The position numbers were made by a program, and so were the translations under genes. The notes beneath the pieces were generated by a model. That model was given only the letters and a program-made list of their open reading frames with translations, searched no databases and was not told the DNA's origin. Positions 3,969-59,203 of a DNA stretch of 64,000 nucleotides are shown here, piece by piece. Source of the DNA: Lepidodermella squamata (lineage: Eukaryota > Animalia > Gastrotricha); contig JBLDXI010000002.1 of the NCBI GenBank assembly GCA_047495785.1, forward strand, positions 992,001-1,056,000. Reading direction: 5' to 3'. Each line of letters begins with the position of its first letter. The first letter of the stretch is position 1.

Positions 3969-6521
3969 CTAAGCCCCCGAAGCAATCAAGATCCTCTCAG
4001 CCACAGGCTGCTTCATCCGCCTCGCCATACTAAGAGCCGTCTTGCCAGCTTTATTAACCGCGTTCAGATCTGCCCCGGCCGCAATCAAAGCACCTAGCGC
4101 TTTCGTCGCTCGATTTGCGACAGCATTCAGCAATGGGGTGTTACCCTCGGCAACATTTCTAACTCCATTGATATCAGCACCTTTCGCTACAAGTCGATTT
4201 ATTACTTCATCACGGTCTTTACCTGCCGCCTCCCATAACGGCGTAGTACCGTCCTTAGACAACGCATCGACCTTGGCGCCTTGCTCTAAAAGCAAATCGA
4301 CCAGTTTTACATTACCCTCAAAGGCAGCTAGCGTCAACACGGTTTGCTTATTGTCGTCAATAGCGTCGATTTTCGCGCCCTTGTCGATGAGCATCTTCGC
4401 GATTTCAATGCTGTAGGGTGTATCCTGGGCAGCGGCCATGAGTGCAGTTTGCCCGTACTGCTTATCGCGAGAATCTACATCTATTCCGTTATCGAGAAGG
4501 ATTCTGAAACACGTCATCATCTCGTCGTCCATGCTGTAGATAGCTGTGGTTAACGGCAGCTGACCAACGGCTTTCACAACTGTTTCGAGAACTATTTTCT
4601 TGGGGTTGAGAAGTGTCGGCAGTAGGTTGCAGTGTTTCCAAGCAACAGCAAGGGTGATGGCGTCGTAGTCAGACGCGTCTTGAATCGTTGGATCTGCGCC
4701 CTTGCCTAACAAGAAATCAACAGCGGCTTTGTTGTTGCAAAGAACAGCGTGATGAAGGGCGGTTGCATGGAAGAGTTCAGACACGTCACAGGAGGCGATA
4801 CTGTCCGGATGTTTCCAGTTGATTGAGCAGCCTTTTTCCAGAAGTCGTTGCACTACCTCGAGAGCGCCGCTGCCTGCGTTTCTTATCAATTCCCGTTGGT
4901 CTTTTTCTGCCTGTAAAGAAATAAGAGCTTTGATTTGATTAAGGACTATATAACCAGATTTCCCAACTTTTCGAGGTTTAATGGCTTCAGAAACAAATTA
5001 ATCCCAAAACACAGAACAAAAATTGGTACCTATGTCAAAACGTGCGAAAAGCACGATATTAATTGAGTCACTGGAACTTACACACGGTTCTGGAAGTTTT
5101 TCACAAGGCGCGGCGATGCTCCAACTGTTGGTTTTATCCGCAGGCTGAGTTTCGCACGTAACTGAGCCTCCGCCGGTGTAGCCCTCGTTGCATTCAAAAC
5201 TTCTCGTGGCTCCAATTTCATTCGAGCCATGGTGAAAGTAGCCATTTTCGATGTGGGGATCGCGGCACGTTGTTGATGTTGCTATAATTTCGCGAATAAA
5301 ATAAATGAATTAGAAAGCTTGCGTTAACTCACCTTTCGCAACGCAAATACCAGCAAGAACCCAATCTTGAACGGCATCGATATCCTTGCATTCAGCGGAG
5401 TTGCCACCTTCGACTTCGAAGCCATCATGGCAAGAAAAGTGGCGGACTGAATTCAAGTCTTTCGAACCGGCAATAAAGTCACCGTTCTCAATAAATGGAT
5501 CGGAACACTCAGCCCGAATGGGTAACTCATTAGCTACCTTCTCTGCATGCAAAAACTCGTATTAATACGAAAATGCTTTTTCTTTAGGTCGAATTTACCT
5601 TCGCAGTCCGCTAAAGGGTTAATTTTGACCCATTTATCGACCTGACACGTGACTCCAATATGGCCATGGTAACTGATGTAGCCATCTGTACAGTTCCCAG
5701 ATCGAGAAGCCCCGTCGTAAGAGCCACCTTTATTGTAAACAGCATTTGGAAAATTCGGCTCTTCCTTGCATTCGGCTACGAAAATACAGCGTAAAATTGC
5801 GAAGTTCAAGCAACTGTTACTCACTTTTACAGAATCTTCTTTCCGTGAAGTCGATGGACCACGTGCCATCTGAATTGCAAGTTGACGTCATACCATGGCC
5901 GTAGGTGTTGTTGCCATTACGGCATTCAAGCATCATAATCTTGTTCGCGGTGATTGGGCCTTTCAAACGCTGAACCCATTTCCCGCGATTGCCCATGAAT
6001 TTGATGTAGTGCCATCGGTGCTCTTCTGGGTTAAAGTTCGGCTCTGGACATGGTACAAAGGATCTCATCGATACTTCCTAAATTAGAAAAATATACAAAT
6101 AAAATTTCAAGTATGATTCACAGAAGATTACCATGGTATTCACGTCCTCGAAATTTGCATCCCACCGGCCGGTTTCTAAGCACGTGAAATGGCGGATTAA
6201 TTGAGCAGGCTTGTCAGCATCGTAGGAATCTTTCCGCTTGATACTGACAGAGCATTTGGCATTGACGAGTAGAAGGCGCCCATCCGGGTGTCTCAGGTAG
6301 TTTTGGACGCCTGGCTTGGCTGTTTCTTCATCGAACTCTACGATCAAGTCGCTAGAGACAGGTGGAACACGGCATCTTACAACCTTGGTTTCGATAAAAT
6401 CTCATCAACATGAGGTCAATGTGCTGATAAAACATACCTTCAGGTGATATCGTGATTTATCAATCGGGCGCGCATTCAAAACAATGAAACAAGTGAACAA
6501 GTTAAGTATAAGGAACCGCAT
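3969..6521 (-). CDS. Sushi-ankyrin gene A: signal peptide + 5 CCP-like modules + C-terminal ankyrin repeats
   Basis: ATG 6521 MRFLILNLFTCFIVLNA. Exons 6521-6438, 6383-6132, 6077-~5825, ~5776-5600, ~5544-5333, ~5282-5082, and ankyrin exon 4910-3969. Phase-compatible GT-AG introns. CCP pattern C-P-NG...C..GY...C...W...C. Confidence 0.85.
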
Positions 6522-6861
6522 CCTAAAGAGAGATTTACTTAGGAAAGGCGAACACAAGAAGGGAGGTCTTAATTTTATTTTACAGTGTAAATTTTAAAAT
6601 TAAAAAGATTATCCACATGAAATAACTCTGAGACTAATTTTGGTCTGAAAGCACAGAAATCAATGATTGATGAACATGTGGCGAAAATTATGTAAATTGG
6701 AATTGAGAACAACGCTACACAAGGTGACACGTTCATCTTGGTGAAGGGTGCCATAAGTCCAACACAGTGAGTAATGATAACTTTGATAATAACGCTAAGT
6801 AATATAGCTTTAGAATAAGACTAAACGAGCCGCGCATTTGTTTCAACGATAGAACGCCATC

Positions 6862-9800
6862 TTAACATTCTTCGTTCAAATCGACACCATGATCGAGAAG
6901 CATTTTGAGAAATTGCCTGCGTCTAGCTTTGATCGCAACTCTAGCCGCCGTCTCTCCACGGCCATTTCTGACAGACAAAGCTGCCCCATTTCGCAGCAAA
7001 ATATCGCCAATTGCAATGCCATCGATTCGAGCAGCTAGCGTTAAAGGCGTATCTAAACCGAACTCAACAGGGTTGAGGTCTGGGATTGAATCGAAACGCA
7101 TATTCAATTTCCTAGACACTGTAGTTCCGTTCAAATAAATTTCCACCATCTGCGAATCATTTGCGAGAATTGCGACATATAAGCCACGTTGAACAGTTAT
7201 CGCCGAAAGCGGCTGGTTCAACATGAGCTTCACAGTTGGATGTTTGCGATACTTGGTCGCTAGGGCCAGAGCTGAGATTCCATTTTCATGCTTCGGAATG
7301 TATTCAATGACTTCTTTATCCATGGTTAGAAGCTTCATAATATCAGGATCAGCACCGGTATAGATTGCCAACTGAAGCGCATCCGTGTCATCTTGAGCCC
7401 GGACGTCGATTCTAGCGCCTTTGTCTAGGAGAAATTGAACAACTTGACTCGTCGAATTTTGGCACGAAATTGCTCTAATCAGGGCGGTTTGGTTGATTCC
7501 GTGTAGGAAACAGTCCTTCGCGTACATTGGGTTTTGCCAGTTTATATCAAGGCCGTGCTTTACGAACAAGTTTTCGGCCTCAGTCAAATTATGGGCTACA
7601 ATCGCTTCGAAAAAATCCATTTCCGCATCGCCTAGGAAAAGAGAAAAGCTAATTTCATCAAAGCTAAATTTGTATTAAAAATTAACGAATTGGAAAAACG
7701 TTATTGAAAAAATTAACATTTAATAATATATTTGAAATTAAAATTCAAAATTATTAAAATTAATTTAATTTTTTTTGAAAAATCCTAGAAACAGGCGAAT
7801 ACCATAGTCTTACAGAAATTAAGCTTGGAAATAATTCATACTGATACTGATACTGTTTATTTTGCATTTTGTTTTACAACATTTAGCAATTTGGAATTAA
7901 CAATATGTTAGGTTATGGCGCCTCACCACAGAAATTGTGAATTTATCCAGGTCGGCAGTATATTTAATATATTTCAAGGGATTATACCCACTTGCGCATT
8001 ACCACTTGCGCATTCCCCTTTGCGCACGAAATTTCCCACTTGCGCATTCCCCTTTGCGCACGAGTAAATAATAATAATAATAAATAATAATGTAACAATA
8101 AGCGACTTATGTTCATCGCGCGCACGCGTCCATGCTAAGTCACCATGTTAACACGTGTACTGTTCGTATATGTGACACCTGCTTAATCCGGTTGGCGCGA
8201 ATTAAATTAACAGACTTAGCAGCACTGAAGTGTCATTACAGTTACGAATTATTGCTTACCTACATCCACCTTAATTCGCTCTAAGTCATGGATGAGAATT
8301 GCGAGCCTCCTCAAAAAAGAGGTAGAGGGCGACCTAAAGGTAGTAAGAACAAGACTACTGAAGCACCCGCGCCCCCAGTGTTACCGAGCGCTGTTGCTCA
8401 TCGAACTCGAAGAGCCAAGCCGACGGCGCCGCCGCCGCCGCCGCCGCTGCCGCCTGCTAATAGAACGTCACCCGCTTCATCGACGCCGCTTCAGGCCAGA
8501 ACTCTGTTCGCAATGCAACTCGACCCGTATCGCTCTAGCCCCCTTGGTGTCTCGCCGTTCCCCACGCTGGCTCAGCTGGCACCCTCTACACTTCCTCTGC
8601 CGCTTCCTGTGACACCGCTGCTAACCGAAGCTAATCCGCCTCAAGAGCCGGCTGCGGTAAATCCTGTGGTAAATCCGTTTGACCTGGATGTGCTGTCACC
8701 CAACAGCCGCGTTACACACCTGTTGCAGCTGCTGGAGACTGAGAAGAAGAAAAGCCTCGAGCTGCAAAAGCGACTGGAAAACCAGGCGACCGCGTCACAG
8801 TTCGCGGCTGAATGCAGCCTCGTCGTAGAAGAGGTGAAAGAGTGGGAGGAATGGGAGACGACAAAGCTGAAACCGGTACGATGTGCCGGTGGATACGAGT
8901 ATCGGCTGGAAATGCGCGATGATCGCGAGTTATGGCGCTGCCGTTATGACAAGCGGTGTAACGGCCGGGCAATTTTCGACGAAGAAACCGGAAAGTACAC
9001 CTTGAAAAGTACGAATAATCGACTTTAATTAAAGCTTGTAAAAATAGTTGTTCTGTTTGATAGCCCTCGAAGGATGGCACAATAAAATCAATCGCCTCGC
9101 CCATAATCTGCACTTGTCGTTCTGGGCTTTCATCGAGCTGATTCTTGGCGAGGAAACAGATGCTCGTGGCAAGCTGCTACAACAAATTTCGGGTGAAGAT
9201 CTTGCTTGCCCAAAGAAGAAGTATGAACATGTCAACAAAAATTTGGCAAAATTAGCGACCAAGTTGCTGGAAAAGAAGCTCACTGTTATTGAATACTTAG
9301 ATGGCGCTGCCATTAACCTAGCTTCATTCAACACTATTTACTAAATAAACTCATAATAATAGTGTGTGCGCTTTATTATTAATAATTTGGCTGTGCGCAA
9401 AGGGGAATGCGCAACTGGGACTACTTACCCTATCTGCTCGTGCGCAAAGGGGAATGCGCAAGTGGTAATGCGCAAGTGGGAATACACCATTTCAAGAATG
9501 AGGGATACGAATTATTATCACCCCTCTGAAATTATTTATGCCTTGGTCCTAAAATCAGTCGGCCACTGTGTTGACCATTGTTCGGATTAAAATCAGACCG
9601 GCGGATTTTATGAGCGAGCCGCCGGTCTGATTTGTCTTAACTCGAACGAAGGTCAACTCAGTAGCCGTCAGATGGCAGAGCAAAAATTAAGACAACCCAA
9701 AAAGAGACAGGACAAAAAAATAGGTTAAGGAAAAAATGGCGAAAAAGGCGAAAATACAACAAATTCCTGGCTTAGGTAAAGGTAAAATGCCACGTTGAAA

Positions 9801-14012: not shown

Positions 14013-17000
14013 TTATCGGCTGAGTTTGGGTGACGTATTCGCAAGATTTTGACAAATCGGCATTGTCCGGCAACCTTCAGTTGATGCACCGTTGAGAGCA
14101 AGCAGTTGAACAATCCGAGGAAATCTCTTCTTCGCTGCAATCGTTAACGCCGTGTCACCGGCCTTGTTCACCGCGTTAACATCAGCGCCATTGGCCAACA
14201 GTACGGCTAACACCTTTACCGAACGATGGCTGACCGCATTCATCAACGCTGTATTGCCATCGACGACATTGGCAATCCCATTGACTTGGGCGCCTCTTTT
14301 GATCAGAGTTTTGATGATTTCATCGTTATCTTTAGCCGCAGCCTCCCACAACGCCGTAGTTCCGTTCATAGTTTTCGCATCGATCTCCGCCTTGTAGTCC
14401 AACAGGATCTCAACAGTTTCCAAATAGCCTGTGAAAGCCGCGAGTACCAGCGCGGTTTGATTCATTTTATCTCGATTGTTAACCTGGGCACCCTTCTCGA
14501 GAAGAAATCTAACGACTTCAGGGTAGTCAACGGCGAGTATCAGCGGGGTTTGGCCGTAATCAGCGTCTTTCGCTTCGATATCGCCACCGTACTGTATTAT
14601 ATTTTCTAGGCAAGATGTCATAGCTGGGCCGTAATTCTCAATCACAGTTTTTAGGGGCCACACTCCCAAAGATTTCATCAAGCTTTCTCGATTATCTTGG
14701 ATTTTTTCGTGATCCAAAACAGTAGAGATAATGCCGCAATTTCCATATGAAAGCCCGAGGGAAATCGCGTCGAAACCTAATGCTTCTTTGATTGCGGGGT
14801 CGGCATTTTGATCAAGTATGAAAGAGATAGCAGTTTCCTTCCCGCAAATGACGGCATGATGCAGTGCAGTGGCATTCAGTGCCTCGCTTGCGTTTTCGCA
14901 GTAAGTTGTGGAAGATGGGTCTCTCCAGTTGATGTCACACTGGGAATCTCCCAACAGCTTAAGAGCGGATTCCACCTCAACGCTTACAGCTGCTTTGATC
15001 AGCTTTCGTTGATCCTCAACAGACTGTTAAACTTTCAATATTGCAAGCTATAAAAATGGTGGTAAAAAACTCACGCAGGATGAGGGTTCGCAAGTTGGCG
15101 GAGGCGACCATTGTGAATCATCTCCGCAAGTTAAAGTGTCAGAGCCTTTCAGAGAGTATCCTTCGAAGCATTTGACAGCCGCAGTCAAAGCCTTTGAGTC
15201 TGAACCAGTCGTGACCTCGCTGTTCTCAATAACCGGGAGCTGCCCACATCGTGACAAGCCAGAATCTGCGGTGAAAAGGTACAAATACGATGTTAAGTTG
15301 GGACATCATAAAGGGGTGTGCATTTTCCTACCATCAATTTTAGGACTAAACCAGAATTTTTTGTATATTTCACCATTAACTTTGGGGTTTTCATCATCAA
15401 AGAACGGAAGCGGAAACAGCCATTAATTTAGATTCTTGCACCAACAAAATGAATTTTCTCTCCAGAGATTGGAGAATGGATTAGCAAAAGTACCTAAATT
15501 GAAGGCAATTTTCGTTTCGTTGGCGAAAGCCCCAATTTGATGGTAAAGACCCCCAAAATGTATGGTAGAAAGCATTTCCCCTTTGAAAAACAGCACCTAG
15601 CATTCTTCAATGCTATTTGGGCAAACGAACCTTGTTGGCATGTTCCAACTTGACTCCATTCAGGCTTGCCAGTTTCCAGCAATACTTCACAAACAGCTTC
15701 ACCTTCCCCTATGTAGCCGTCATCGCAAGTGAATTTTCGCTTCGAATCGATTGAGTTGGATCCTGCCTCAAAACGTCCGTTTTCAATTCTAGGCTCGCCG
15801 CCACAAGATTCTAGGAGTAACGCAACAGATAATTAACTTCAAGTTGTGGATAGTTGAAAACCTTACCTTTAGGTACACATTTGCCCCGGTAGACCCAATC
15901 AAGCGTGCCATCTGATTTCGTTATGCATTCCGCGAAGTTCTCTCCTTCGACGATAAATCCTTCATTGCAGCTGAAAAGTCTCTTAGCACTTTCTGCGTTC
16001 GGGCCGTCATAGAAAGCACCATTCACCATCTCCGGGTTCAAGCATAACGAGAGTTTAGTACTTCCAGTGCCATCTGCAAGCATTACGATATCATAAAAAG
16101 AAATCTCACAAATATCAAGGTTACTTACCTGATTCGCACGAAGCGAGTGGATGCTGCCTCACCCACTTTCCATCACGGCAGACCACATCCAAAGTTTCGC
16201 CATGGACGATATTGTAGCCAGTGACGCATTTCCCCATACTGATGTCTCCTTGAGCAATTCCAGCAATGGAATAAACAGCATTGGCAAGCTTCGGTTCATC
16301 TTTGCACGATGCTTGGGAAAGGAAACAAAAATTGTTGTAAAATCAACAACAAAATCGCATTACGTTTGCAAAACTGTGGGCCAAGCAAATTAACACTCCA
16401 GACGCCATCCGCACCGCAAACAGAAGTCACGTTATGGCCGTAGTTATCAACACCGTTCAGACATTCAAGCCTGGCCTTGTCGTTTTTCGTTGGTGTCTTC
16501 GCTTTCCATTTCAGCCAGAAGTTGTTGGCCCAGTATTTGATGATGTGGTTCGGATGTGTGTGCCGATTTACTTTTAACCACGGACAGAATGTGATAACAC
16601 CCCTCACTCGCTGCGAATAATTGAGCGAATAAACAATAAAAGCGACAAATTTAATTGTTAACTCACTGGATCGCATGTATAATTGAACGGGTGGTCCCAA
16701 CTGCCGGTTTCCATGCATTTCAAGTAAGGAATAGCTTCCTCTTCAGGTGATCCTGATTTCAAATCGGAGTCACTTGAACAAGTGACTTGAACGGAGCAAT
16801 TTGCCTTGACATGAGTGATTTGACCATCATTGTTACGGCTGAAACCGTCAGTACTGCATGACGTGTCGAAAGGCTCGATGATCAATGACTCGATTACAGG
16901 AACTTGGCACTGTACGGCCTGAATAATTGAGAGTATAAAATGTATAAAAATAAATATATTTATGTATATAATAAAGATTAAATTTGGAATAATTTTCATG

Positions 17001-17288
17001 GGGAAAGGCAAGCCAAAACCGTATGAAAATTGCTGGCCGCTAAAGCAAAGTTACATACAGTATTTGTTGAAATAGTAGCCAAGTCACTAATAGTCGCTAA
17101 TAGGGGTTGAAAATGTAATAGCCCGGGCTAATATTGGAACAAAAACCGTGCATTTCCACTTCGAATTTGGGTCTAATGGGTATAACTGAAAAATCAATAT
17201 ATTTTACCTTTTCCTCAGCCACAGCGCAGCGAATAAAGCAAAAACTCACCACACATAAAGCAACATGAAATGAAACTTTCAAACGCAT
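14013..17288 (-). CDS. Sushi-ankyrin gene C: signal peptide + 6 CCP-like modules + ankyrin repeats
   Basis: ATG 17288 MRLKVSFHVALCVVSFCFIRCAVA. Six single-CCP exons between 16918 and ~15075. Ankyrin exon 15023-14013 (SVEDQRKLIKAAVS...CDINWRDP). Confidence 0.87.
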
Positions 17289-18511: not shown

Positions 18512-21500
18512 TTAAAATTCTGGGAGGACAAGCTCTGGCAGTTCCGTTGTAGTCGTCGTCGTAGTCTGCTTCTTACAAATGTCCATAGTCTTGCAGACTT
18601 CAAGAGAAGCCCCGTGCTCTGCCAATATGTCCACGATGCGAAACGAACCCATCTTTGCAGCCACAAGCATGGCAGTTTCGCCAGCTTTGTTCGTCGCCTC
18701 GAGGTCAGCTTTCGGAATCAACTTTTCAATAACCTTACGAGCTCTCTTTTCAACAGCGTTGATCAGCACGGTATTGCCGGTGAGAACATTGGCAACCCCA
18801 TTGACTTGCGCGCCGCTTTCGAGCAGAAACTCTACAACGTCGTCGTTGTTTTGGCCCGCAGCCTCCCAAAGCGCTGTCGTACCATTCGCAGTTCGCGCCT
18901 CAATGTCAGCGCCCTTTTCAACCAATTGCGTAACAACTTCATAATTGCCACGAAAAGCCGCGATGATCAGAGCTGTTTGGTTGAATTTGTCGACAGTATG
19001 AACCGACACGCCACGGGCGAGAAGTTTCTCCGCCACTGCCGGACCAGTTTCAACGTTGCTTGCTGCAAACATCAAAGGCGTTTGGCCGTAATTTTCTTCA
19101 GTCGATTCGACATCAGCTCCGTAGTCCAGTAACGAGTCCAGGCAGTCATAGTCGATTCTACCTTCGTCATCGGGTCTTTCCAAGACCGTGAAGATCGGCA
19201 ATGTTCCAAGAGCTCTCAAGTTGCTCCACCGCTTTTCAAAGTTGAAGTTCAAAATTGTTTTAGCGATGTCGCAGCGTCTCCAATACAGCGCGAGAGTGAC
19301 GACATCAAACTCGCTAGCATCCTTGATAAACATGTCGCCTCCTTTCGAGTTGACGTATTTGACGGCACCTTCGCGTTCGCAGTAAACAGCGTGATGGTAG
19401 GCGGTTGCATTGGCAGCCTCGCGGCCTTCGCAATAGGCAACTATTTCAGGATCTTGCCAGTTGATGTTACAATGTGCTGCCAGCAGTCTTTCAGCCTCAT
19501 CGAAATTAATTTCGTCCTGTCCTGCAATAGCCTTGATGAGTTTGCGTTGATCATCATCCGACTTCAAAAAAACAAAATGTTAAGTTGATTTTTGAATTTT
19601 AAATTCCAGAATAAGCTATAGACGCAGGAAAATACGCTGTACTTACACATCTTTCCTCGCATTTCGCGTCGAATTTCCATTTCAAATCTCGGCCACAGGT
19701 CGCCACGTTAGAACCTTTCAGCATGAAGCCAGCTTTGCACTCGAAGGTGGCGATCGACCCAGGAAAAAACGGTCCAATGTTTACATCTCCGGATACCAAA
19801 GAGCCGTTTTCGAGAACGGGTGGGGCCTCACAGGGTGGCAAATCTATAAGGCAAGATAAATCGACTAGAACATTGATCAGACAATGTTGCTTACCACCCA
19901 ATGCACAGTTGCCCGAAAACGTCCAATCAGCCATGTTATTGTAATCAAGGTCGCAGGTCGCGTAGCCTTGGCCATCTTGGAGTTGGTAGCCTGGGTTGCA
20001 TTTGAAGTCGCGTTTTGAGCCGATGCTGTTGCTTCCGTCTGAAAACTGTCCATTGTCTACTTCAGGATCAGCACAGTTTGTTGGAGGAACTGAAATAATA
20101 ACACGAATTAGCGGATGCTCTTCGATTACCAAAGAGAAATGACTCACTTGTTGATGCGCAACTGCCTAGGATATCCCAGTCGTAGGAGCCATCGCCAGAA
20201 TCCTTGCAAATTGCTGTGTTTTCTAACTCCAACTGGAATCCTTCGTTGCAAGTGAAGTTCAAGCTTGTAGAAACTTCATTGGTTCCTTCGCTAAAGACGC
20301 CATTCGGAATGAATGGTTCCGGGCAATACGCAGTTTGAAAACCTTGAATTGGATCTAAATATTCAATGTGGATAAAAACAGGAATAAAGTTTAAGAAAGC
20401 TATCTAGGAATCAAATCGGTCGATAGAAGCCGCCGATCACACGAAAAATATAAATAAAAAAGGATGACTTTTGGCATGGGTTTAGGACGAATTATGATTT
20501 TTCTGTCAACTGTATATGCCTGTTATCAAACGCTAAGGAGAAGAGTGTATAGATGCCTTTTCATTATGTATTTTTAGCGAATTTTTCGGCCCGTTCCTGA
20601 ATTTTCGCCCGCTCACTAAGACGTAGCCATAGAGAAAAAATGACCCCATTTTCATTTTTTCAAATTCTTGTCATTCCATATTCATGTGGTTCCTCGGTCT
20701 CATATTTTGACCATGAACAGTCAGAAGCCATTTCAGCAAGTTCACGCAATCTCATGAGCCAATTCCTCACCGTTAGCGAGCCATCGTTGCTCAGAGCTTT
20801 AAAAGGAAAAAATTGATAATCGCTCGAGGGCGCCCTAAATTTGCTCATAAAAGCCACGATAAAATCTTCACTTCTGAACCTGAACTGCACACTCGCTCAA
20901 TTTGTATCCTTTTGGGTTCAGGTTTGGTAGATTGATAAGTGCCAACACGTTGAGAATACTCTAATTTATCAATCTACCAAGCCTGAACCCAAAAGGATAC
21001 AAATTGAGCGAGTATGTCTCTTATGGTCTGCTTATGGTCAAAATATGAGCCTGGGTTATAGAATGGTTATGGGATGACAAGAACGTGAAATAAGTGGACA
21101 TTTTTTCTACATATTTAGGTAACCCTACCCACGGTGGGTAGGGTTACCTATACATGTAGAAAAAATGTAACCCACCTTATCCTAATTCTTGAGTAAATTA
21201 GTTCAACTTACTTGGTTCTGGTTCGCACGCAGCCAACAGCATGGTCTTGTGCCATATTTTGTCGCGACATTTCATTGCAATTTCGCCATGCACCTGCATA
21301 TATCGGCTCTTGCACCTGCCGTAACGAACAGCGCCCTCGTAGTTCGGGCCTTTCGGGAAAACCGCGTTCTCAAATTCAGGCTCGCCATCGCATCGGGCTA
21401 TAGGTAGCAAATACAGTAACAAGTTGCAGAAAAATAAGATGTCATGAGATTTACCTTTGCAAAAGCTTTCGTCAGCGAAATTGACCGACCAACTGAAGTC

Positions 21501-22175
21501 GCTTTGGCATACTGCTATCGTATTGTGGCCTATAAGATCATCGCCGTTGCCTTTGCACAATAGTCTCATCAAGGTGCCGACTCGCGGGACGGCGATAATC
21601 GGCAGCCATATATCACTTCCTGGCTTTGCGTATGAGACATTGTGGTTTGGATATTTGCTGGGTTGTAGCTTCGGCCGGCTACAAAATGATGATGAGAATC
21701 TTTCTGCCGCCTGGATCGGAACGAATAATATGAAAACTCGATAGAATAGCCATATCTTATTCTGAACCCTTACCACGCATTTGTAGTCGAAAGCGTCGTT
21801 CCATCTGCCGTTGGGCATGCAGGCACGAGTGGGCGTTATTACCATAGGATTTATGAATTCGTATTCAGCATCGCATTTCACTTTGACCGCACAATTCGCT
21901 GTGACGATTATGGGTCTATTGTCGGATTTTCTTGTCAGATAGTTTCGAGGTGACAGCTCGCAGGTTGTTGTGTCGGGTTCGACTATCAAGTTCACGACTT
22001 CGGGCACGCGGCATCTCGGCACCTGAATGAGTGAATGAATTATAAAAAATCACATCGAAAATTCGACAATGATGAAAAGCAAAACTGAGAAATTTACCTG
22101 ATAATGCTTTCGGCTTTTCGCTAGAACACTCGGAGCAGTCAAGCCGACGAGTATTATGAATGAGAAAAGTATCAT
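18512..22175 (-). CDS. Sushi-ankyrin gene D: signal peptide + 6 CCP-like modules + ankyrin repeats + Thr-rich tail
   Basis: ATG 22175 MILFSFIILVGLTAPSVLA. CCP exons from 22022 to ~19648. Ankyrin exon 19561-18512. Confidence 0.87.
20640..21170. repeat. Nested inverted repeats / foldback MITE-like sequence in gene D intron
   Basis: ~48-nt arms at 20891-20938 and 20966-21013. Looser outer arms ~20662-20720 and ~21027-21085. Near-perfect palindrome 21099-21169 centred on ctacccacggtgggtag. Confidence 0.8.
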
Positions 22176-23753: not shown

Positions 23754-26700
23754 CTAGATCTCTTGGAGATCTGGCAATGTTGTTGTAGGAGCTGTCGTCA
23801 ACTTCACGCACGTTTTGCAACCTTTCGTCGAAGCATTTTTACCTATCAGCAAATCCCTCGCCTTTTTATAATTCTTCTTATCAGCTACTACCAAAGCAGT
23901 CTCGCCAGTAACTGAGTTGACAGCGTCAACATTGACGTCGGTATCGAGAAGATACGACCAAACTTTACGGGCTCGATTCCTAATGGCAGCCATCAGAATT
24001 GTATCGCCATCGACCACATTTGTGACGCCATTGACTTGAGCTTTGTTCTCGAGCAGCACGCTCACCACTTCATCTTGGTTAGCCGCAGCAGCTTCCCACA
24101 GCGCCGTCGTGCCATTAACACCCTTCGCCTCGATATCGGCACGATTTTCAAGCAACATCCGCACAACATCAGTATTGCCTCGAGCAGCAGCGATTATTAG
24201 GGCGGTTTGTTGGTAATTATCGCGAGCATCTACCTCAGCGCCTTTTTCCAACAGAAGTGCAGCGAAGTCGGGGCCGTTTTCAACATTGCCAGCTGCATGC
24301 ATCAGAGGCGTTTGACCGTAATCATCATCTTTAGCCTCCAGATTAGCGCCAATATCGAGCATCGATTCCAAGCAAGATTTCGCGCCGGTTTTTATGATAA
24401 TAGAAAACAAGTATGCGCCAGCTGATTTAACGATTTCGGCACTTTTCTCGTTGTGAAGGCGAAGAATTTGCTCAGCCAAATCGCACCTGGAATACTCAAG
24501 GGCCAGCGTGAAAGCGTCAAACTCGGCCAATTCGCTAATTTGAGGATCAGCGCCGTGATTTTTCAAGAATTTCATAGCTTCTGCATTTTCACAACTGACA
24601 GCTTGATGATAGGCAGTTGCATCGATGTGAACGCGACCTTTGCAGTACATCGCCGCCTCAGGATCCTGCCAATTGATATTGCATCCAAAGCCGATGAGCC
24701 GTTCCGCAATTTCAACATCAACGTCAGGGCCAAGGACAATCGCCTTAATCATTTGGCGCTGCTGCTCATCAGACTAAATACAATATAAATAAAATAAAGC
24801 GATAAGATCAACTTTTGAAATCAGCTTAAGCTATTTTTTCTCAAGGAATGACAATGAGCTATCTGGCAACCCAAATTTACTGGTACAACGAGAACCAGGT
24901 GTAATCTATTGACTCCCAAAACAACCAATTCGAAGAGGTCCTATGTCCGAAAAAACGGAACTCACGCATGGTTCGAGGCATTCGGCATCGACAATCCATT
25001 TAGAATCTGCATTGCAGGTGATCGAACCAGAACCCTTGATTTTGTAACCATCTTGGCATTGGATCGTCAATTTGAAACCAGGTAAGTAAGGACCCGAGGC
25101 TTCTTGAGGTTCAGCGTGTTCTACAAAAGGCAGCGGAGATTCCTAAAGCCGAATCGAACGGATAAAGATATTATTTAGACATGAATCAACTTACGCAAGG
25201 AGGGATCTCGCATTTCACGTCGTATTCCCACTTTCCATTTTTGCATTCCATTTTGGGTACACCATGTAGCTTGAAACCAGTTTTGCATGTAACGGTAACA
25301 GTTGGCGTGGAGGCGGAACCTGGTACTGTTTCAAAAATTGCGTTTTCAATCTTCGGTGGTTCGCCGCAACTTGGAGCTACAACAACGAAAACGAGCTTTT
25401 TAGCAATCAACAGAAGTCAAAGTAATCTCACCGCCATCGGAAGTTTTGAAGCCATCATCTGCTTCGGAACATTCCCCGTGGAACTCCCAGTCGTTCTCAT
25501 TAATGTCCATCATGTACACACAAATCGCATAGCCCCCGCCGATGTAGCCCTTGTTACACTTGAAATGACGCGTTGAGTTGAGGTCGTTCGAGCCATCGAG
25601 GAAATAGCCGTTGTCAGCATTAGGATCCTTACAATTTGGCGAAACGGCTAAAATTAATTAAATTGCTCACATGTTAGAGGAGTTGAAGTTAATCATTACA
25701 TACTGAGAGATCTGCAAAATCCTTTGATGTCCCAGGTAGGCCCGTCATCTTGAGAAACGCATTCAGCAGTGTCCAGGCCAGCAACTTCGAAGCCTTCGCT
25801 GCAAGCAAATGTTCTCGTTGAGCTTAGTTCGCTAGTGCCAGGCTGGAAGTAGCCATTTTCGATAAAAGGATCGGGACAAATTTGCATAGAAGTTTGGGAG
25901 TTGGCTGATGAAAAATAAAAATGTTGTGTTGTAAGTCAGCTTGTTCGTCTATACGCGCTAGGCTTTTGCTTTAAATCTTTAAATTGGGGTTGTAAGTTGA
26001 AAATTGAATTTAGACACCCTATACAAATTGGACTAGGTTTTCCATCATTTTGAGATTTTAAAGAAATAATGAATTATGATATTCAATTTGAAAGGGATTT
26101 TAATTTCGCATTAGAAATCTTAAATTTCGACTTTTGACTCAAAGATTCCGGAAAATGCTTACGTGACAAAGATTCGCATTCCGCCATTGGACTTGCTTTC
26201 AGCCATTTGCCATTATAGCACTTCATCTCGACAGATCCACGAATGCTCGAAAACCCATCGATGCATTTACCCTTGCGGTAGGCGCCATCGTGCGATTCAC
26301 CCTTAGATTCCATAACAGCGTTTTCGAACTTCGGTTCTTCCTTGCACATTTCTGAACAAGAGCTTGCTAGCAAAAAATTGATAATATCAAATTATACTTA
26401 CTTTTGCAATACCGAACATTCGTGAAATCGTCACTCCAAGCCCCGTTTTCGAAGCACTCTGACTCCAACCCGTGCCCGATGTTATCTGATGCGTTGAGGC
26501 AGGACAGTTGCATCCTAAAACCAACCTTTGGAAATTTCCGTGTTTGAGCGACCCAGTGCTTCGAAGTGGGGGCTTTGTACATCACCGAATGCAGCGGATA
26601 TTTCGCCTTGTCGTATGCCATCGGAGGGCATCCTATTACGGCTCTGACTCCGGGCTAGAAAAATCATTTAACCTAATGTTATCAGATAATAGCTGGAGGA

Positions 26701-32813: not shown

Positions 32814-32944
32814 TATTTGCAATAATTAAAAAGCTGCAAGATCAGAACCACTGAGAGATCTTTTTATTCAACTCATAATGTTAAATGGAGGACGCAGAGA
32901 GAATGCCTCTAAAACTTTACAACAAAGAAGAGATTCCCATGTGA

Positions 32945-50472: not shown

Positions 50473-51884
50473 TCATTGCAAATCAGGGCAGTTTTCAAAG
50501 TCATGACCAGGTTGATTGCAGTTCCAGCACAGTGTTTGACTCGATAATTGCCGATCAAATCGTTTTCGCTCTTCAATAGCCGCCGATAATTCGGCATCAG
50601 TGTTAACAACAGGCCTGCTGTAGTGATCACCCATAGCCGGTCTTATATCAAACGGCGAATAATTGTTATCGTGATCTCCATCGTCATAAACAGCCATTTC
50701 GAGTTTACGCAGGTACTCGGGTTCGATAGTTGACGGTTCCAGGTTGGTACTGCTGTTACCGATTTCTGACTCTGATCTCGCTGATTGGATCCTTTGAAGT
50801 CGGCTGGAACCCCGCGAGGCTGTTGCAGATCGCGGCCGAGGTGGCGGTGGTTCTCGTCGTATTTCAACCTCGGGTTCCACCGCTGGTACCAGCTTATGAA
50901 ACTTCCGAAACCGAACATATTCCCGCATTAAAAATCGTAACATTCGATGGCTGTTGAATTTCCGCGCTAGATCCAGCGCTGTCTCGCCGTGTGCCCGGGA
51001 TTTTTGGACAAAAAATTGATATTTTTCAGAATCACCCTTAACAGCATTAAGGAGGATTTTCGCAATATCAGCGTGGTTGTGCCTCGCCGCTGTATGAAGC
51101 GCTGTTTCGCCATTTGAATTCAAAATATAAACAGCTTGGCCGCGAGTTGCTTCAATGATAAATTTCGCAGCTTTCAGACACACATTCCCGGTTTCAGCGG
51201 TTAAATGAAGCGCAGTTTGACCTGAACTCCCCACTTTTTCATGAGCCAATATATCCACGCCGCGTTTTGCCAGTAAATAAAGCGCGTCGATATTGCCTGA
51301 TTTCGCGGCGCAGTGAAATGGATTACGGCCGTATTTATGGTCGATCGATTGGATTTCGGCTCCATTTTCCAGCAAAAGTTGAATTAAGCGAGGTTTGTTG
51401 CTCGGGAATTCTTGGCTACACGCCCAATGTAGTAGGGTGAAACCGGTTTCATCACAGGTATTTGGGTCTAAGTTCTCGTGTTTCAACAAAATTTCGAGCA
51501 GATTAAGACCGTTTTCTCCACCTCGTTCAACCGCTTTTACGATGTTTTCGAAGGCCTGAAAAATATTTATTAAAATTCAGGCTAATTAAAATAATTTAAC
51601 TCGCTAATTTCGGCTTTATTGCTGTTTGATAGCGATCGTCCAAGAGCTGTTCAATTAAAATTGAATTTATTTTTTAATTTTTCAATTTATTTTACCTTCA
51701 CACGAACAGCTGCTTGAGCCTCAATTTGCCACGACGTATATTTCGGCAATTTGAACTGTGGATTATCCGGGTCATTCAAGGTCTCGAAGATCATTATAGA
51801 CGACCTGTCGCCTCGAGGCCGATATTTTCGGGGGGTCGATGATCTCGAAGTGTTCGGCGCGCTCATAGATTCGCTAATTTCCAT
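50473..51884 (-). CDS. Cytosolic ankyrin-repeat protein with C-terminal CCHC zinc knuckle
   Basis: Ankyrin motifs (GFTLLHWA, GRNPFHCAA, GQTALH, GETALHTAA). CWNCNQPGHDFENC = CX2CX4HX4C. No signal peptide. First exon from 51884. Confidence 0.8.
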
Positions 51885-53381: not shown

Positions 53382-54153
53382 AACATTTGAAAAAACTTGA
53401 AACCGAATCAAAGTCTGCATGATTCTTGATGTCTTTACTTAGCTTAATCAACTTATCCTCATTCAACTCATTCAGATTCTTTGCAATCCAATCACACGTA
53501 GCTATTATTATTGAATAAATATATTTATTCGACGGAGGACTGAGTTTTCATTTGAAAAATCCGCAATTAAATGCGAGATACCACAATAACCTTTTATTTG
53601 TAAGCGTTAACGTTATTAATCATATCATTATTGCCTGATGATAAGCTATAGCCGATGATGAAGTTTCTGAGAAATACAGGAAATATAGATAAAAGAGAAG
53701 CAGCTTTTTCCGAATTAATTGGAATTTTTTGGAATTTCCCACAAAAAGAATCAAAAGACTTGGTTTTAACTTGGTTCTCTATCGAACTCAAGGAGACTCT
53801 CGGCCACGGTGCAATTATATTAATATCCTGAATCCGATAGACCGAACTTTCGATCGCCTTTACCGAAGAAATAAAACCTTCCTGAATTTTTCTGTGAGCC
53901 GCTTGTCAAGAATCAAGAATTAAGAGGTAACGGTAACTAAAATTGAAGGCTTTGCGATAAGATGCGGCTTAAATCAGCATTTTAATTTAATTTAAATGTC
54001 ATCAAGAAGATAATTAAATGCAAAATATGCGTCACAAAGTAGCGCCATGGCCTCGATCACAGAATCGTCTCATACCTTCGCCGCTCGAAATGACAATAAA
54101 GTAGAGATAAAGCAAAAATTTTAAAATAAGTGAAAGAACAATTTTCTAATAAA

Positions 54154-55024
54154 ATGAAAATTCCTCTACGCTTGATTTCTGTTCATTTTTACACATTTTT
54201 GCACCTCTTCGCAACTGTCAATAATCAGCAATCACCACCTCGCCAACTCGTAACCGCCAACCCGCCAACCACGAACAGGCTGGCAAGTGGGGCGATTTAT
54301 GCGATTCATTCTCAAGCAACCGATGTGCCTCCCTGTCCAAGTTGTGCTCTTAATCTGTGGAGCGGATACAGCCTGTTTCAAACTTCCGACTCGGGTCGCG
54401 CAAGTGTGACCCAAAATCTAGGCCAAGCTGGGTCGTGCATGCGCCAATTTAACGCTACGCCTTTCGTTTATTGCGGATCAAATGAGGCGTGTGTAGCCAA
54501 TTCGAGGTCGACAACTACCCATTGGCTGTCTAGCGATTCACGGGCTCAGTATATAAATCTATATGGGTTTGACGAGGGTCGAGAGGTGCCGCTAACGTCG
54601 AGCGGCGATATTATGACTCAGATTTCTCGGTGTAGTGTCTGCTTGAGCTCAGGGCCTGTTTTCGCGATCCACTCCGGATCCTCAACCCTCCCGACCTGTC
54701 CGGGAAGTAATTTCCAATCTCTATGGACTGGTTACAGCTTTTTAATGGTAATCTAAATATTTTCACATTCGAATTTTTAAGGTAGCTGATTTTTTTCAGC
54801 ATTCAGCTGGTGGCCAGCAGTTGGACTCGCCTGGCAGTTGCTTGATTCATTTTCGGCACCATCCTTTCATCGAATGTACGGCATCAGGGCAATGCTCCTA
54901 TCCGTCAGATATGGCGTCTTATTGGTTGGTTGCAAGCGATGCCTATTACGGCAATGGCGTGAAACGCCGCGACGAAGCTGCCTCTGGAATAAGCCGATGC
55001 AGGGTGTGCACTCTACGCAATTGA
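54154..55024 (+). CDS. Secreted stand-alone collagen IV NC1-domain protein, copy 2
   Basis: ATG 54154 with hydrophobic N-terminus. Same NC1 motifs. Intron 54748-54799. No Gly-X-Y. Confidence 0.9.
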
Positions 55025-57451: not shown

Positions 57452-57802
57452 GTTTCATGACATCTCATGAATATATTCATATTATTGAAACTATCCCCAT
57501 TTCCTTGGAGCTATTTTTGGAGATCGTGAAAAAGGCGTCATTTTGGTCCGTTTTGCTTGGAATAAACAGCCTCATTTCGCACGTGCGAAAAATTTCAACT
57601 AGCATCGCCTCAATTCCACCGTGCGGATCTTTTGACTGTCACTGTAGTATTGAGCAAACCGCAAGACATTATTCTTGCCAATTTTGCCACATTTTTATTT
57701 ATGCGAAAGCTGAAAATTACGAAGGAAAACCAATCGCAAATGGACAACAAAAGGCGGTTAAATCAACATTAAAACCGGCAAAAAATTACGAAAATTCGCG
57801 AC

Positions 57803-59203
57803 TCAGATTTCTTCAAGAGGAAATTCCTGTTTACGAAGGCAGATTTCGAGCTGGCATCCAGTAACATCGGCATCGTATGTCACTAGATGTTCAACAAGAT
57901 CAGCATAGCCATTCTTCGCGGCAATTTGAATCGCCGTCTCGCCATCACTATTCGTCGCATTAACCCTGGCATTATCCGCCTCGAGCAGTTTCAACATGCC
58001 GAATTCCCGCCCAGCCAGAGCAGCGCGATGAAAGGCAGTCTCGCCCCAGCTATTAACAGCACTGACCGTGGTATTGTCTTTCTCTGTTATGTATATGATA
58101 ACTAGATCGATGGCGTTATCAACTGCGAACATCAAGGCCGTATTGCCATCCTTGTCGGCTGCATGAACATCGGCACCGGCTTCGATTAATTTTATCGCGA
58201 TTTCTGAGTTATTAGACGCGATGGCGGCAATTAAGGGCGTCCAGCCTGAGGTTTCATCTTTCTCGTCAAGATCGGCGCCTTCTTTTATATATTTATTAAC
58301 AACAATATCCAGGTCGCCTTTCTTTGCCGTTTCAAACAAGGTCTATAGGAATAAAAATTGTTTGTATGATTTTCAAAAAAATTCAAATTAGGAAAACTTA
58401 ATGTTTTCTGAATTTTTCAATTTTTCAAAAAAAATAAAAAATAATAGAGAAATTAGAAATTTTCCAGCGATTGATACCGAATTAAACCGAAAAAAAACCC
58501 GAGAAATGGTTCGGTAATTATCGGTATTTTTTCCTCGTAGGACCAACTTCTTCCAAATTTTTATTTTATATTCCCTTATCCCTTTAAAAGGCAGAACGTC
58601 ATATCAGCAAATAGTCAAAATAGCAAACGCGACGAAACAGAAACTTTTCAACTGTAGCCATAACAGCAGAAACACAATGAATCTTTGACATTCTGAAATG
58701 TTGCTGTTTTGTCGCATTCACTGTTGCTATTTTGTCGCCGTACCCATTATCCAATTCTTTACTTAATTTTAGTCATTCTCATGGCTTAGGAGTTCATTCA
58801 GAATGACTGGCTCACCTGTGATGTACAGCTGAGGGTGAGATGCGGATGCCAAGTTCCGTCTTTCTGGCAGGTGCTCATCGGAGGGGGATTGCCGCCATGT
58901 GGGCAGGAAACTTGCACAACGTAGCCTGCTGTGAACGATCTTCGAGGAGTTGAATGGAAAGGCTCGGTCTCAGTTGACGATCGCCACTTCAATGTAATTT
59001 GGCCTGGTTTATAGTGAGCAGGCAGCTTGCAAGGAATCGTTGATCTAGGTCCCAATTCACCCTGTTCAAGACCCTGTTAAAACAGAACAAAAGGGGATGA
59101 ACAACGCTGTCGGATTTTCGGCTGCTTTTCTTACATCGGTTGCGTCCTCAGATGATGCACAGATTCCTATTAATGCGATAATTATTCCTATTTTCGCGAT
59201 CAT
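57803..59203 (-). CDS. Sushi-ankyrin gene G: signal peptide + 1 CCP + ~5 ankyrin repeats
   Basis: ATG 59203 MIAKIGIIIALIGICASS. CCP exon ~59073-58816 ends SQ|gtgagc. Ankyrin exon 58342-57803 in phase 0. Confidence 0.82.

What the first reader, a model, noticed from the sequence alone, without database searches (positions are those of the whole stretch)
3969..58342. Cysteines in the ankyrin blocks co-vary in pairs, suggesting disulfide-stabilised ankyrin repeats
Seen: A, C, D and E share six Cys (exon-junction C; C before xINW; C after the W..P loop; HxAVxC; C in repeat 2; xC[L/F]). C, D and E add a C-terminal C-x2-5-C pair that A lacks entirely. B and all three F blocks keep the loop-C/helix-C pair but lack the others. 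F blocks and G keep the C-terminal pair (CYHILC, CSHTVC, CSLGLC, CQLEIC). Inference: paired gain and loss is the signature of disulfides and independently supports an extracellular location.
Basis: partly seen in the sequence, partly recalled or inferred. Interest (0 to 1): 0.82.

Follow-up and report, generated by a model that had tools for sequence, protein, structure and literature searches.

The report
Secreted sushi-ankyrin proteins with conserved cysteines
A cluster of animal genes encodes secreted proteins in which ankyrin repeats, normally found inside cells, follow extracellular sushi modules and carry a fixed, even-numbered set of cysteines that most likely form disulfide bridges, though the bridges themselves could not be checked here.

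Summary
All 45 Cys in the nine ankyrin blocks (2,455 residues) fall in nine alignment columns, and none is stray. In A/C/D/E all five Cys columns are invariant, against 25% of columns overall. An extracellular location is well supported without using the cysteines. Each gene has a signal-peptide-like start and Sushi exons, and F also has a Kunitz exon. No transmembrane segment is present. F2 carries ANK and Sushi in one ORF. An RNA contig splices D's last Sushi exon, which ends in a Cys codon, onto its ankyrin exon.

A parity rule holds. Ankyrin exons with an odd Cys count (A, C, D, E) are exactly those preceded by a junction Cys. Exons with an even count (F1, F2, F3, G) have none.

"Co-variation in pairs" is over-read. 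The pairs never vary independently: they are lost by truncation or belong to one subfamily. B keeps a lone C-terminal Cys.

An AlphaFold2 model (pLDDT 94.7) shows a regular ankyrin solenoid, but the tool returns no coordinates, so Cys-Cys distances were not measured.

No orthologues were found. First-reader notes report the same idea (s1-374062) and similar sushi-ankyrin clusters on other DNA of this genome.

Verdict: probably real disulfide-stapled extracellular ankyrin domains; the pairings are inferred.

The parts
3972..4910 (-). Gene A ankyrin exon (313 aa; stop codon at 3969-3971). Five Cys at residues 28, 41, 58, 94 and 134. No C-terminal Cys pair; the protein ends ...IASGA.
5082..5084 (-). 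Gene A junction Cys codon. It is the last codon of the final Sushi exon (...EPC|GTAAGT) and lies 7 residues after the Pfam Sushi match ends.
6865..7632 (-). Block B ankyrin ORF. Its repeats are degenerate and it has three Cys: the loop Cys, the helix Cys and one Cys as the last codon before the stop. The acceptor appears to be phase 1. A 4.7 kb gap filled with transposon sequence separates it from the signal-peptide/sushi-like exon at 12424-12798.
14016..15023 (-). Gene C ankyrin exon (336 aa). Seven Cys at residues 29, 42, 60, 96, 138, 318 and 324. This block was modelled with AlphaFold2.
15075..15077 (-). Gene C junction Cys codon (...SSC|GTGAGT). The Pfam Sushi match ends 5 residues earlier.
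18515..19561 (-). Gene D ankyrin exon (349 aa). Seven Cys at residues 31, 44, 61, 97, 140, 323 and 329. A poly-Thr tail follows. The RNA contig ends near 18431, about 80 nt past the stop codon.
19562..19646 (-). Gene D 85-nt GT..AG intron between the last Sushi exon and the ankyrin exon. An RNA contig spans it, so the protein reads ...KCEERC|SDDDQRKLIKA. The junction Cys codon is 19647-19649.
   Evidence: joint 19561/19647, run X1
23757..24773 (-). Gene E ankyrin exon (339 aa). Seven Cys, with a C-terminal CKTC. The junction Cys codon is at 24966-24968 (...EPC|GTGAGT).
38004..38393 (-). Block F1: a short ankyrin block with four Cys (loop, helix, CYHILC). No junction Cys; the upstream Sushi exon ends ...QCISLEN|GT.
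37683..37859 (-). Kunitz/BPTI exon between F1 and F2. It is a further disulfide-rich extracellular module in gene F.
   Evidence: PF00014, 47.4 bits
34356..35798 (-). Block F2: one uninterrupted ORF holding an N-terminal C-x6-C, an ankyrin block (loop Cys, helix Cys, CSHTVC) and then Sushi domains. ANK and Sushi therefore sit in the same polypeptide without any splicing.
   Evidence: (Ank plus PF00084 in protein 7)
32948..33628 (-). Block F3: an ankyrin block with four Cys (loop, helix, CSLGLC). No junction Cys.
57806..58342 (-). Block G: an ankyrin block without the Cys-bearing N-cap. It has only the C-terminal CQLEIC pair.
22099..22175 (-). Gene D predicted first exon: MILFSFIILVGLTAPSVLA|KSRKHYQ, signal-peptide-like, followed by a predicted 75-nt intron to 22022. 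Analogous signal-peptide-like starts lie at 6521 (A), 12798 (B), 16999 (C), 27211 (E), 39745 (F) and 59203 (G).
   Evidence: heuristic, no dedicated predictor
50476..51576 (-). Control: an unrelated ankyrin gene with a C-terminal CCHC zinc knuckle. The ORF carries no signal-peptide-like start, so it is presumed cytosolic. Its Cys sit at positions typical of generic ankyrin repeats (for example TLLHWAC, repeat position 11).

Best explanation
The nine ankyrin blocks are luminal or extracellular domains of a tandemly duplicated family of secreted proteins. The architecture is a signal peptide, several Sushi/CCP modules (plus Kunitz and mucin-like stretches in gene F) and an ankyrin solenoid.

Because they fold in the oxidising secretory pathway, their few invariant cysteines most likely form intradomain disulfides that staple non-canonical parts of the solenoid.

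Inferred pairing, none of it shown:
1. A Cys near the tip of an elongated first beta-hairpin finger bonds to the Cys that ends the inner helix of the next repeat. That residue lies just before the G-H turn, on the concave face. This pair is present in all eight blocks that have the N-cap.
2. A short C-x2-5-C loop closes the segment after the last repeat.
3. In A/C/D/E only, the Cys at the Sushi/ANK exon junction ties the linker to the Cys of CxINW, in the loop after the cap's outer helix.
4. In A/C/D/E only, the Cys at the start of the outer helix of repeat 3 pairs with the Cys in the following long helix.

Shown: the Cys positions, their conservation and parity, the gene architecture, one splice junction, and the ankyrin fold of the model.
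Inferred: that the cysteines are oxidised, and which pairs with which.
For: Architecture:
- Ank Pfam hits in all nine blocks, and Ank plus Sushi in one ORF, F2.
- Sushi exons directly upstream of the A, C, D and E ankyrin exons, and a Kunitz exon in F.
- Signal-peptide-like first exons for all seven genes.
- No transmembrane-like segment.
- An RNA contig joins D's Sushi exon to its ANK exon across an 85-nt GT..AG intron. RNA coverage is zero across the region between genes C and D (about 17000-18400).

Cysteines:
- All 45 fall in 9 columns, with none stray.
- Five of five Cys columns are invariant in A/C/D/E against 25% overall. Cys is the only residue type that is 100% conserved.
- The loop Cys and helix Cys are two of five invariant columns across eight blocks that share 25-41% identity.
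- The family positions are rare for Cys in 4,494 generic repeats (2.0%, 1.0% and 0.4%). The commonest generic position (15.5%) is never used.
- Parity: ANK-exon counts are odd (5, 7, 7, 7) exactly where a junction Cys exists, and even (4, 6, 4, 2) where it does not.

Fold:
- The AlphaFold2 model of block C has pLDDT 94.7 and pTM 0.89, and is confident across the Cys-bearing N-terminal region.
- It superposes on generic ankyrin solenoids at TM 0.72-0.83.
- The register is confirmed by PDB alignments: the helix Cys aligns with the residue just before G-H. From my own recollection of DARPin library design (Binz et al. 2003), that is one of the randomised concave-face positions. It would be reachable by a finger that folds back.
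Against: - No Cys-Cys distance was measured, because the tools return no coordinates.
- The junction Cys could not be included in the model.
- Co-variation has no statistical power.
- B has an odd count and ends right after one C-terminal Cys.
- No orthologues were found, so there is no independent evolutionary replication.
- Signal peptides were called by a simple hydrophobicity heuristic.
- Only one Sushi-to-ANK junction is RNA-verified.
- DSSP shows an unusual 23-residue helix around the fifth Cys, so canonical geometry cannot be assumed there.
Confidence: 0.7

Rival explanations
1. The cysteines are shared simply because the blocks are recent paralogues. Their pattern reflects descent and carries no structural role.
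For: The A/C/D/E quartet is confined to one subfamily. The tree cannot separate independent events. The family has no outside relatives against which to test it.
Against: At 25-46% pairwise identity only 25% of columns are invariant in A/C/D/E, yet 5 of 5 Cys columns are. The loop Cys and helix Cys are invariant across eight very divergent blocks. There is no stray Cys in 2,455 residues, although generic ankyrins carry 1.7% Cys, mostly at a position this family never uses.
Confidence: 0.1
2. The cysteines are functional but not intradomain disulfides. They could be metal ligands, intermolecular disulfides that build oligomers or matrix links, or redox-active or lipidated sites.
For: C-x2-C and C-x4-C motifs resemble metal or redox motifs. 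Two of the C-terminal motifs contain His (CYHILC, CSHTVC). B's lone Cys and the junction Cys could make intermolecular bonds.
Against: Spacing varies (x2, x4, x5) and His is absent from most copies. There are never four clustered ligands. Even totals in eight of nine blocks fit intramolecular pairing. The neighbouring Sushi and Kunitz modules are classical disulfide domains.
Confidence: 0.12
3. The ankyrin blocks are not extracellular. The signal peptides are mispredicted, or the Sushi and ANK exons belong to different transcripts, so the Cys are ordinary cytosolic thiols.
For: Signal peptides were called heuristically. Only gene D's junction has RNA support. Ankyrin repeats are overwhelmingly intracellular (general knowledge).
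Against: F2 encodes ANK and Sushi in one ORF with no splicing needed. Conserved phase-0 'Cys|GT[AG]AGT' donors pair with acceptors directly before the conserved QRxLI start in four genes. An RNA contig spans D's junction. No internal start or signal peptide lies between the F blocks. Sushi and Kunitz domains need an oxidising compartment.
Confidence: 0.05

Closest known systems
Toxoplasma gondii RON9 and its apicomplexan orthologues (rhoptry neck protein; PMC3299665)
   Same: A secretory-pathway protein with a signal peptide that combines ankyrin repeats (5-6) with a Sushi/CCP domain. It shows that ANK can fold in the secretory lumen next to a Sushi module.
   Different: [quoted passage not shown] No Cys-stapled ANK cap is described for it, and no sequence relationship was found here. 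The window genes are animal-type: short GT..AG introns and 5-7 Sushi modules, plus a Kunitz module in gene F and a collagen IV C4 gene nearby. They have no transmembrane segment.
Latrotoxins (black widow venom; PDB 7ptx, 9goa, 7pty)
   Same: Natural ankyrin-repeat proteins that act outside the producing cell. Their ANK repeats are among the PDB sequence hits of block C.
   Different: From general knowledge, not tested here: latrotoxins lack a classical signal peptide, have a distinct N-terminal pore-forming region and about 20 repeats, and have no Sushi modules. The similarity here is limited to generic repeats 140-316 of block C.
Designed ankyrin repeat proteins (DARPins) and ankyrin-R/B solenoids
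   Same: Same fold. The block C model superposes at TM 0.72 on DARPin fusions and AnkB. The helix Cys aligns with the residue just before the G-H turn, which is a DARPin randomised concave-face position as I recall it from Binz et al. 2003.
   Different: These are cytosolic or engineered, cysteine-poor and stable without disulfides. They have no elongated Cys-bearing first finger, no C-terminal C-x-C loop and no Sushi fusion.
Multi-CCP secreted proteins (complement regulators, CSMD/SVEP-type proteins)
   Same: N-terminal signal peptide followed by strings of Sushi modules, roughly one per exon, arranged as tandem gene clusters.
   Different: To my knowledge, known CCP proteins end in other extracellular modules or a transmembrane segment, not in an ankyrin solenoid.

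Membership tests
Ankyrin repeat domain (Pfam Ank / Ank_2) | Sequence match to the 33-residue repeat above Pfam thresholds | tested here: met
   All nine blocks score far above the gathering cut-offs.
Ankyrin repeat domain (Pfam Ank / Ank_2) | Stacked helix-turn-helix plus beta-hairpin solenoid fold | tested here: met
   AlphaFold2 model of block C: pLDDT 94.7. TM 0.72-0.83 to solved and predicted ankyrin solenoids.
Sushi/CCP module-containing secreted protein | Pfam Sushi domains in the same polypeptide | tested here: met
   F2 ORF holds Ank plus Sushi. Exons upstream of the A, C, D and E ankyrin exons are Sushi. D's junction is RNA-verified.
Sushi/CCP module-containing secreted protein | N-terminal signal peptide and no transmembrane segment | tested here: inconclusive
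   Hydrophobic signal-peptide-like starts precede all seven genes. No transmembrane-like window occurs in the ANK blocks. No dedicated predictor was available, and full cDNAs are lacking.
Disulfide-bonded cysteine pairs | Partner sulfurs within bonding distance in a structure | not testable with these tools
   Structure prediction returns pLDDT and DSSP only. No coordinate files appear in /data.
Disulfide-bonded cysteine pairs | Even Cys count and strict conservation of each Cys | tested here: met
   Eight of nine blocks are even once the junction Cys is counted. Five of five Cys columns are invariant in A/C/D/E. There are no stray Cys. B is the exception.
Disulfide-bonded cysteine pairs | Independent, repeated co-gain or co-loss of the two partners on a phylogeny | tested here: inconclusive
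   Zero changes for the loop/helix and C-terminal pairs. The quartet tracks one subfamily and the tree is unresolved.
RON9-like apicomplexan ANK-Sushi proteins | Sequence homology and the architecture signal peptide - repeats - ANK - Sushi - C-terminal transmembrane segment | tested here: not met
   Homology to RON9 was not tested directly; no RON9 sequence was fetched. The general searches found no related N-cap or family member. Domain order differs and there is no transmembrane segment. The RON9 description comes from PMC3299665.
Latrotoxin family | Latrotoxin N-terminal domain plus about 20 ANK repeats | tested here: not met
   Only generic ANK repeats align to the latrotoxin chains 7ptx, 9goa and 7pty. 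The N-terminal modules here are Sushi.

The most novel reading that the evidence does not exclude
This genome has evolved a lineage-specific extracellular ankyrin scaffold. It is a solenoid adapted to the oxidising secretory pathway by a disulfide-stapled N-cap finger, a linker-to-cap disulfide inherited from the first Cys of a displaced Sushi module, and a C-terminal Cys loop. The scaffold is fused to CCP modules and amplified into a large secreted family used for extracellular recognition in immunity, adhesion or symbiont handling. That would make it a natural counterpart of engineered DARPins working outside the cell.
Probability: 0.3. Interest if true: 0.85.

Novelty: new variant of a known kind. 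Interest (0 to 1): 0.62.

Why it matters
Ankyrin repeats are the textbook intracellular recognition scaffold. To my knowledge, natural examples that fold in the secretory pathway are very rare, and none of the papers my searches returned describes conserved disulfides in one.

If confirmed, this family would show how a cytosolic repeat fold is adapted for extracellular life. It keeps few cysteines, all at non-canonical places, removes every unpaired Cys and adds sequons at finger tips. It would also provide natural design rules for disulfide-stabilised ankyrin binders.

The exon-level detail matters as well. The junction Cys sits where the first Cys of a following Sushi module sits elsewhere in the family. 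That suggests a concrete exon-shuffling route by which the fusion arose and then had to recruit a partner Cys.

Tried and rejected
- **Homologue hunts.** All were blank or swamped by generic ankyrins:
  - full block C against 5.8 billion proteins (best hit 29% identity);
  - a profile of the eight N-caps against 1.8 billion representatives (only giant multi-repeat proteins, none with the DINW...C...C motif);
  - D's N-cap alone (nothing);
  - ESM Atlas by features and by shape;
  - AFDB clusters;
  - exact look-ups of two window ORFs.
- **Taxon identification.** The dynamin-like ORF gave only unnamed Logan hits, 62% identity at best. The organism stays unknown: an animal-type compact genome with 51-85 nt introns.
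- **Single-sequence AlphaFold2 of block D.** Too poor to use (pLDDT 55.6).
- **Phylogenetic co-variation test.** The tree is unresolved, with long branches, so the test has no power.
- **Hypervariable concave binding face, as in an immune-receptor repertoire.** Not supported. Concave and finger positions are more conserved among paralogues (0.40) than back-face positions (0.19).
- **N-glycosylation sequon enrichment.** Only mild, 1.14 against 0.72 per 100 aa, so not used as evidence.
- **Missing second C-terminal Cys downstream of B, or a lost pair downstream of A.** Neither was found.
- **Literature.** No paper in the held library describes animal secreted Sushi-ankyrin families or disulfide-bonded ankyrin repeats. 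RON9 is the nearest precedent.
Full report
**What is in the window.**
The window is from a eukaryote with a compact, animal-type genome. GC content is about 42%. Introns are short, GT..AG, 51-85 nt, and two were seen directly in RNA contigs.

Nine ankyrin-repeat blocks lie on the minus strand between 3.9 and 59.2 kb. All score far above Pfam Ank thresholds. Their stop-to-stop ORFs are:

| Block | ORF |
|---|---|
| A | 3972-4997 |
| B | 6865-7674 |
| C | 14016-15026 |
| D | 18515-19579 |
| E | 23757-24773 |
| F1 | 38004-38402 |
| F2 | 34356-35810 |
| F3 | 32948-33640 |
| G | 57806-58342 |

**The blocks are the last or internal exons of secreted multi-Sushi genes.**
- The exons immediately upstream of the A, C, D and E ankyrin exons are Pfam Sushi domains. 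More Sushi-pattern exons lie further upstream.
- A Kunitz/BPTI exon lies between F1 and F2 (47.4 bits).
- F2 is a single uninterrupted ORF holding Ank repeats followed by a Sushi domain (protein 7). ANK and Sushi are therefore in one polypeptide there with no splicing assumption.
- Each of the seven genes has a Met followed by a hydrophobic core upstream of its first Sushi exon. Examples are D, MILFSFIILVGLTAPSVLA, and E, MRLFILISILCAIALVDS (heuristic).
- No such start lies between F1, F2 and F3.
- No ANK block contains a transmembrane-like window.

In an RNA run (X1), coverage follows the exons and is zero across the region between genes C and D (about 17000-18400). One contig joins 19647 to 19561, skipping 85 nt with GT..AG on the minus strand. 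D's protein therefore reads ...KCEERC|SDDDQRKLIKA. The same run shows D's transcript ending about 80 nt after the stop codon, so the ANK exon is terminal.

In a related organism's DNA run (X2), the small insertions and deletions listed fit this exon/intron map. Seven indels of 1-5 nt cluster at 19580-19614, inside the 19562-19646 intron. A one-base and a two-base insertion at 19157 and 19160, together 3 nt, preserve the frame of D's ankyrin exon.

**Checking the observation.**
In exon numbering for block C the Cys are:

| Residue | Motif or position |
|---|---|
| C29 | CxINW |
| C42 | loop |
| C60 | HxAVxC |
| C96 | third helix pair |
| C138 | xC[L/F] |
| C318, C324 | C-terminal pair |

- A, D and E have the first five at homologous columns.
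- C and D have C-x5-C at the end and E has C-x2-C. F1, F2, F3 and G have C-x4-C.
- A stops (..IASGA*) before that motif.
- The 'exon-junction Cys' is real. In A, C, D and E the last Sushi exon ends in a Cys codon followed by GT[AG]AGT. The acceptor lies directly before the conserved [SA]x[ED]DQR start. D's junction is RNA-verified.
- The Pfam Sushi match ends 5-7 residues before that Cys in C and A. It is therefore a fifth Cys, outside the four of the Sushi module.

B ends one codon after a single C-terminal Cys and so has three Cys. F2 has an additional N-terminal C-x6-C. No block has any Cys outside these columns.

**Is it more than chance?**
- All 45 Cys in 2,455 residues fall in nine alignment columns.
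- In A/C/D/E, 76 of 305 ungapped columns are invariant (25%), yet all five Cys columns are (P about 1e-3). Cys is the only residue type that is 100% conserved; Trp is next at 33%.
- Across the eight N-cap-bearing blocks (25-41% identity), only five columns are invariant. Two of them are the loop Cys and the helix Cys.
- As background I built a repeat HMM from generic ankyrin hits and aligned 4,494 repeats.
  - Generic repeats place Cys mostly at repeat position 11 (15.5%). The family never does.
  - The family's positions are rare for Cys in generic repeats: position 13, just before the G-H turn, 2.0%; position 27, the Ala of GADVN, 1.0%; position 16, first after G-H, 0.4%.
- An unrelated ankyrin-CCHC gene in the same window (50476-51576), presumed cytosolic because its ORF shows no signal-peptide-like start, has its Cys at typical positions such as TLLHWAC.

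**A parity rule.**
ANK-exon Cys counts are odd (5, 7, 7, 7) in exactly the four genes that carry a junction Cys. They are even (4, 6, 4, 2) in the four blocks whose upstream exon ends without one. Eight of nine blocks, and five of five distinct patterns, are even overall.

This implies that in A/C/D/E one disulfide links the Sushi-ANK linker to the ankyrin domain.

In gene E a Sushi-to-Sushi exon boundary has the same form (...KCEIPPC|GT), where the terminal Cys is the first Cys of the next Sushi module. The junction Cys before the ANK exon therefore looks like the retained first Cys of a Sushi module whose remainder was replaced by the ANK exon. This is inference.

**Why 'co-variation in pairs' is over-read.**
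On a tree built without the Cys columns, the loop/helix pair and the C-terminal pair show zero state changes wherever the segment exists. A pair that never varies says nothing about coupling.

The losses are losses of whole segments. A is truncated before the C-terminal motif, and G lacks the N-cap. The four A/C/D/E-only Cys track one subfamily, and the tree is unresolved, with long branches for B, F3 and G.

B breaks the rule by keeping one Cys of the C-terminal pair. B also looks degenerate: its repeats are weak, a gap of 4.7 kb filled with a LINE fragment and another ORF separates it from its signal-peptide/Sushi exon, and its acceptor is phase 1.

The correct description is 'three conserved, even-sized cysteine modules'. 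It is not demonstrated pairwise co-evolution.

**Structure.**
- A single-sequence model of D was unusable (pLDDT 55.6).
- With a 51-row alignment of nine paralogues plus 42 trimmed generic ankyrins, block C modelled at pLDDT 94.7 and pTM 0.89. Confidence was 89-97 across the Cys-bearing first 150 residues.
- The model is a regular solenoid. It gives TM 0.72 to DARPin fusions and AnkB and TM 0.79-0.83, rmsd 2.1-2.9 A over about 300 residues, to ESM Atlas ankyrins.

DSSP places the Cys as follows:

| Residue | Location in the model |
|---|---|
| C29 | loop just after the cap's second helix |
| C42 | near the tip of a long beta-hairpin (bridges at residues 35, 39, 48, 51) |
| C60 | last residue of the next inner helix |
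| C96 | first residue of an outer helix |
| C138 | within an unusually long helix (122-144) |
| C318, C324 | flanking the start of a short terminal helix |

PDB alignments confirm the register. C60 aligns with the residue just before G-H, and C96 with the residue just after it. As I recall from the DARPin library design of Binz et al. 2003, the pre-G-H residue is a randomised concave-face position that lies next to the beta-turn residues. A Cys in an 11-residue finger insertion folding back onto it is therefore geometrically reasonable.

The tool returns no coordinates, so the decisive distance measurement was not possible and the pairing scheme remains inference.

**Relatives and literature.**
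- No orthologue or N-cap relative was found by any route.
- PDB sequence hits cover only the canonical repeats 140-316 and include latrotoxins.
- The organism could not be named.
- In the held literature the only secretory protein combining ANK and Sushi is apicomplexan RON9, with a signal peptide, 5-6 ANK repeats, one Sushi and a C-terminal transmembrane domain (PMC3299665). No animal family and no disulfide-bonded ankyrin repeat turned up.
- Unchecked first-reader notes report many more secreted Sushi-ANK clusters in this genome, and the same 'co-varying cysteine pairs' idea on another piece of it. I could not read those sequences.

**Function.**
The concave and finger positions of the canonical repeats are more conserved among paralogues than the back face (0.40 against 0.19 mean pairwise identity). 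An NGT sequon at one finger tip is kept in C, D, E, F2 and B. This argues against a hypervariable concave binding surface in this small sample. It fits a shared ligand or a structural or glycan role. The function remains open.

**Verdict.**
The sequence facts are right and non-random. The extracellular location is well supported by independent evidence. Disulfides are the best reading, with confidence of about 0.7 that the Cys are oxidised in intramolecular pairs and lower confidence for the specific pairing. The co-variation argument itself is weak, and the structural test is still outstanding.

I file it as a new variant of known kinds, an ankyrin solenoid fused to a CCP-module secreted protein, and not as a new category.

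Noticed in passing
window 24966-25416 (gene E) and the junction codons 5082-5084, 15075-15077, 19647-19649, 24966-24968: In gene E a Sushi-to-Sushi exon boundary ends '...KCEIPPC|GT', where the last Cys is the first Cys of the next Sushi module. The Sushi-to-ANK boundaries have the same form. The junction Cys therefore looks like the retained first Cys of a displaced Sushi module, which would be an exon-shuffling footprint.
   Followed up: partly
window 18515-18600 (D tail), 23757-23830 (E tail), 34780-34850 (F2): After the C-terminal Cys pair, D and E carry poly-Thr (mucin-like) stretches ending ..ELPELVLPEF and ..TLPDLQEI. In F2 the same place reads ..CGSLPELPNADF, the start of a Sushi domain. 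The D and E tails may be vestiges of a lost downstream Sushi.
   Followed up: no
window 52535-53137 and 54130-54756 (+): Two tandem ORFs encode collagen IV C-terminal (C4/NC1) domains (Pfam PF01413, E = 7.8e-33 for the first), each behind a signal-peptide-like start. They resemble short-chain collagen genes.
   Followed up: partly
window 40449-48873 (-): A multi-exon ABCA-type ABC transporter gene, with two nucleotide-binding-domain ORFs and membrane-domain ORFs, lies between gene F and the ankyrin-CCHC gene.
   Followed up: no
window 50476-51576 (-): An ankyrin-repeat gene with a C-terminal CCHC zinc knuckle, unrelated to the Sushi-ANK family. The ORF shows no signal-peptide-like start, so it is presumed cytosolic. 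Its Cys sit at positions typical of generic ankyrin repeats, which made it a useful internal control.
   Followed up: partly
window 60038-61885 (-): A single-exon dynamin-family ORF of 616 aa. Its best database relative is only 62% identical (an unnamed Logan protein) and the next best is 26%. This indicates a poorly sampled lineage or a fast-evolving paralogue.
   Followed up: partly
window 11562-12482 (-), 28230-28937 (+), 8288-9028 (+): Reverse-transcriptase fragments (LINE-like) and a proline-rich ORF with a Cys/His-rich C-terminal segment that looks FLYWCH-like to me. They sit in the gaps of the cluster. One set fills the 4.7 kb between B's signal-peptide/Sushi exon and its ankyrin exon.
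   Followed up: no
window 2571-3105 (both strands): A tandem repeat that gives long ORFs in several frames (PPRRRLHHALPPRRRLH...). It is probably a low-complexity minisatellite and not a gene.
   Followed up: no
window 14016-15023, 18515-19561, 23757-24773, 34830-35798, 6865-7632: An N-G-T sequon at the tip of one beta-hairpin finger (NGTTALWEAA) is kept in C, D, E, F2 and B. An N-Q-T sequon in the preceding finger is kept in C and D. Conserved N-glycosylation at finger tips is possible.
   Followed up: partly
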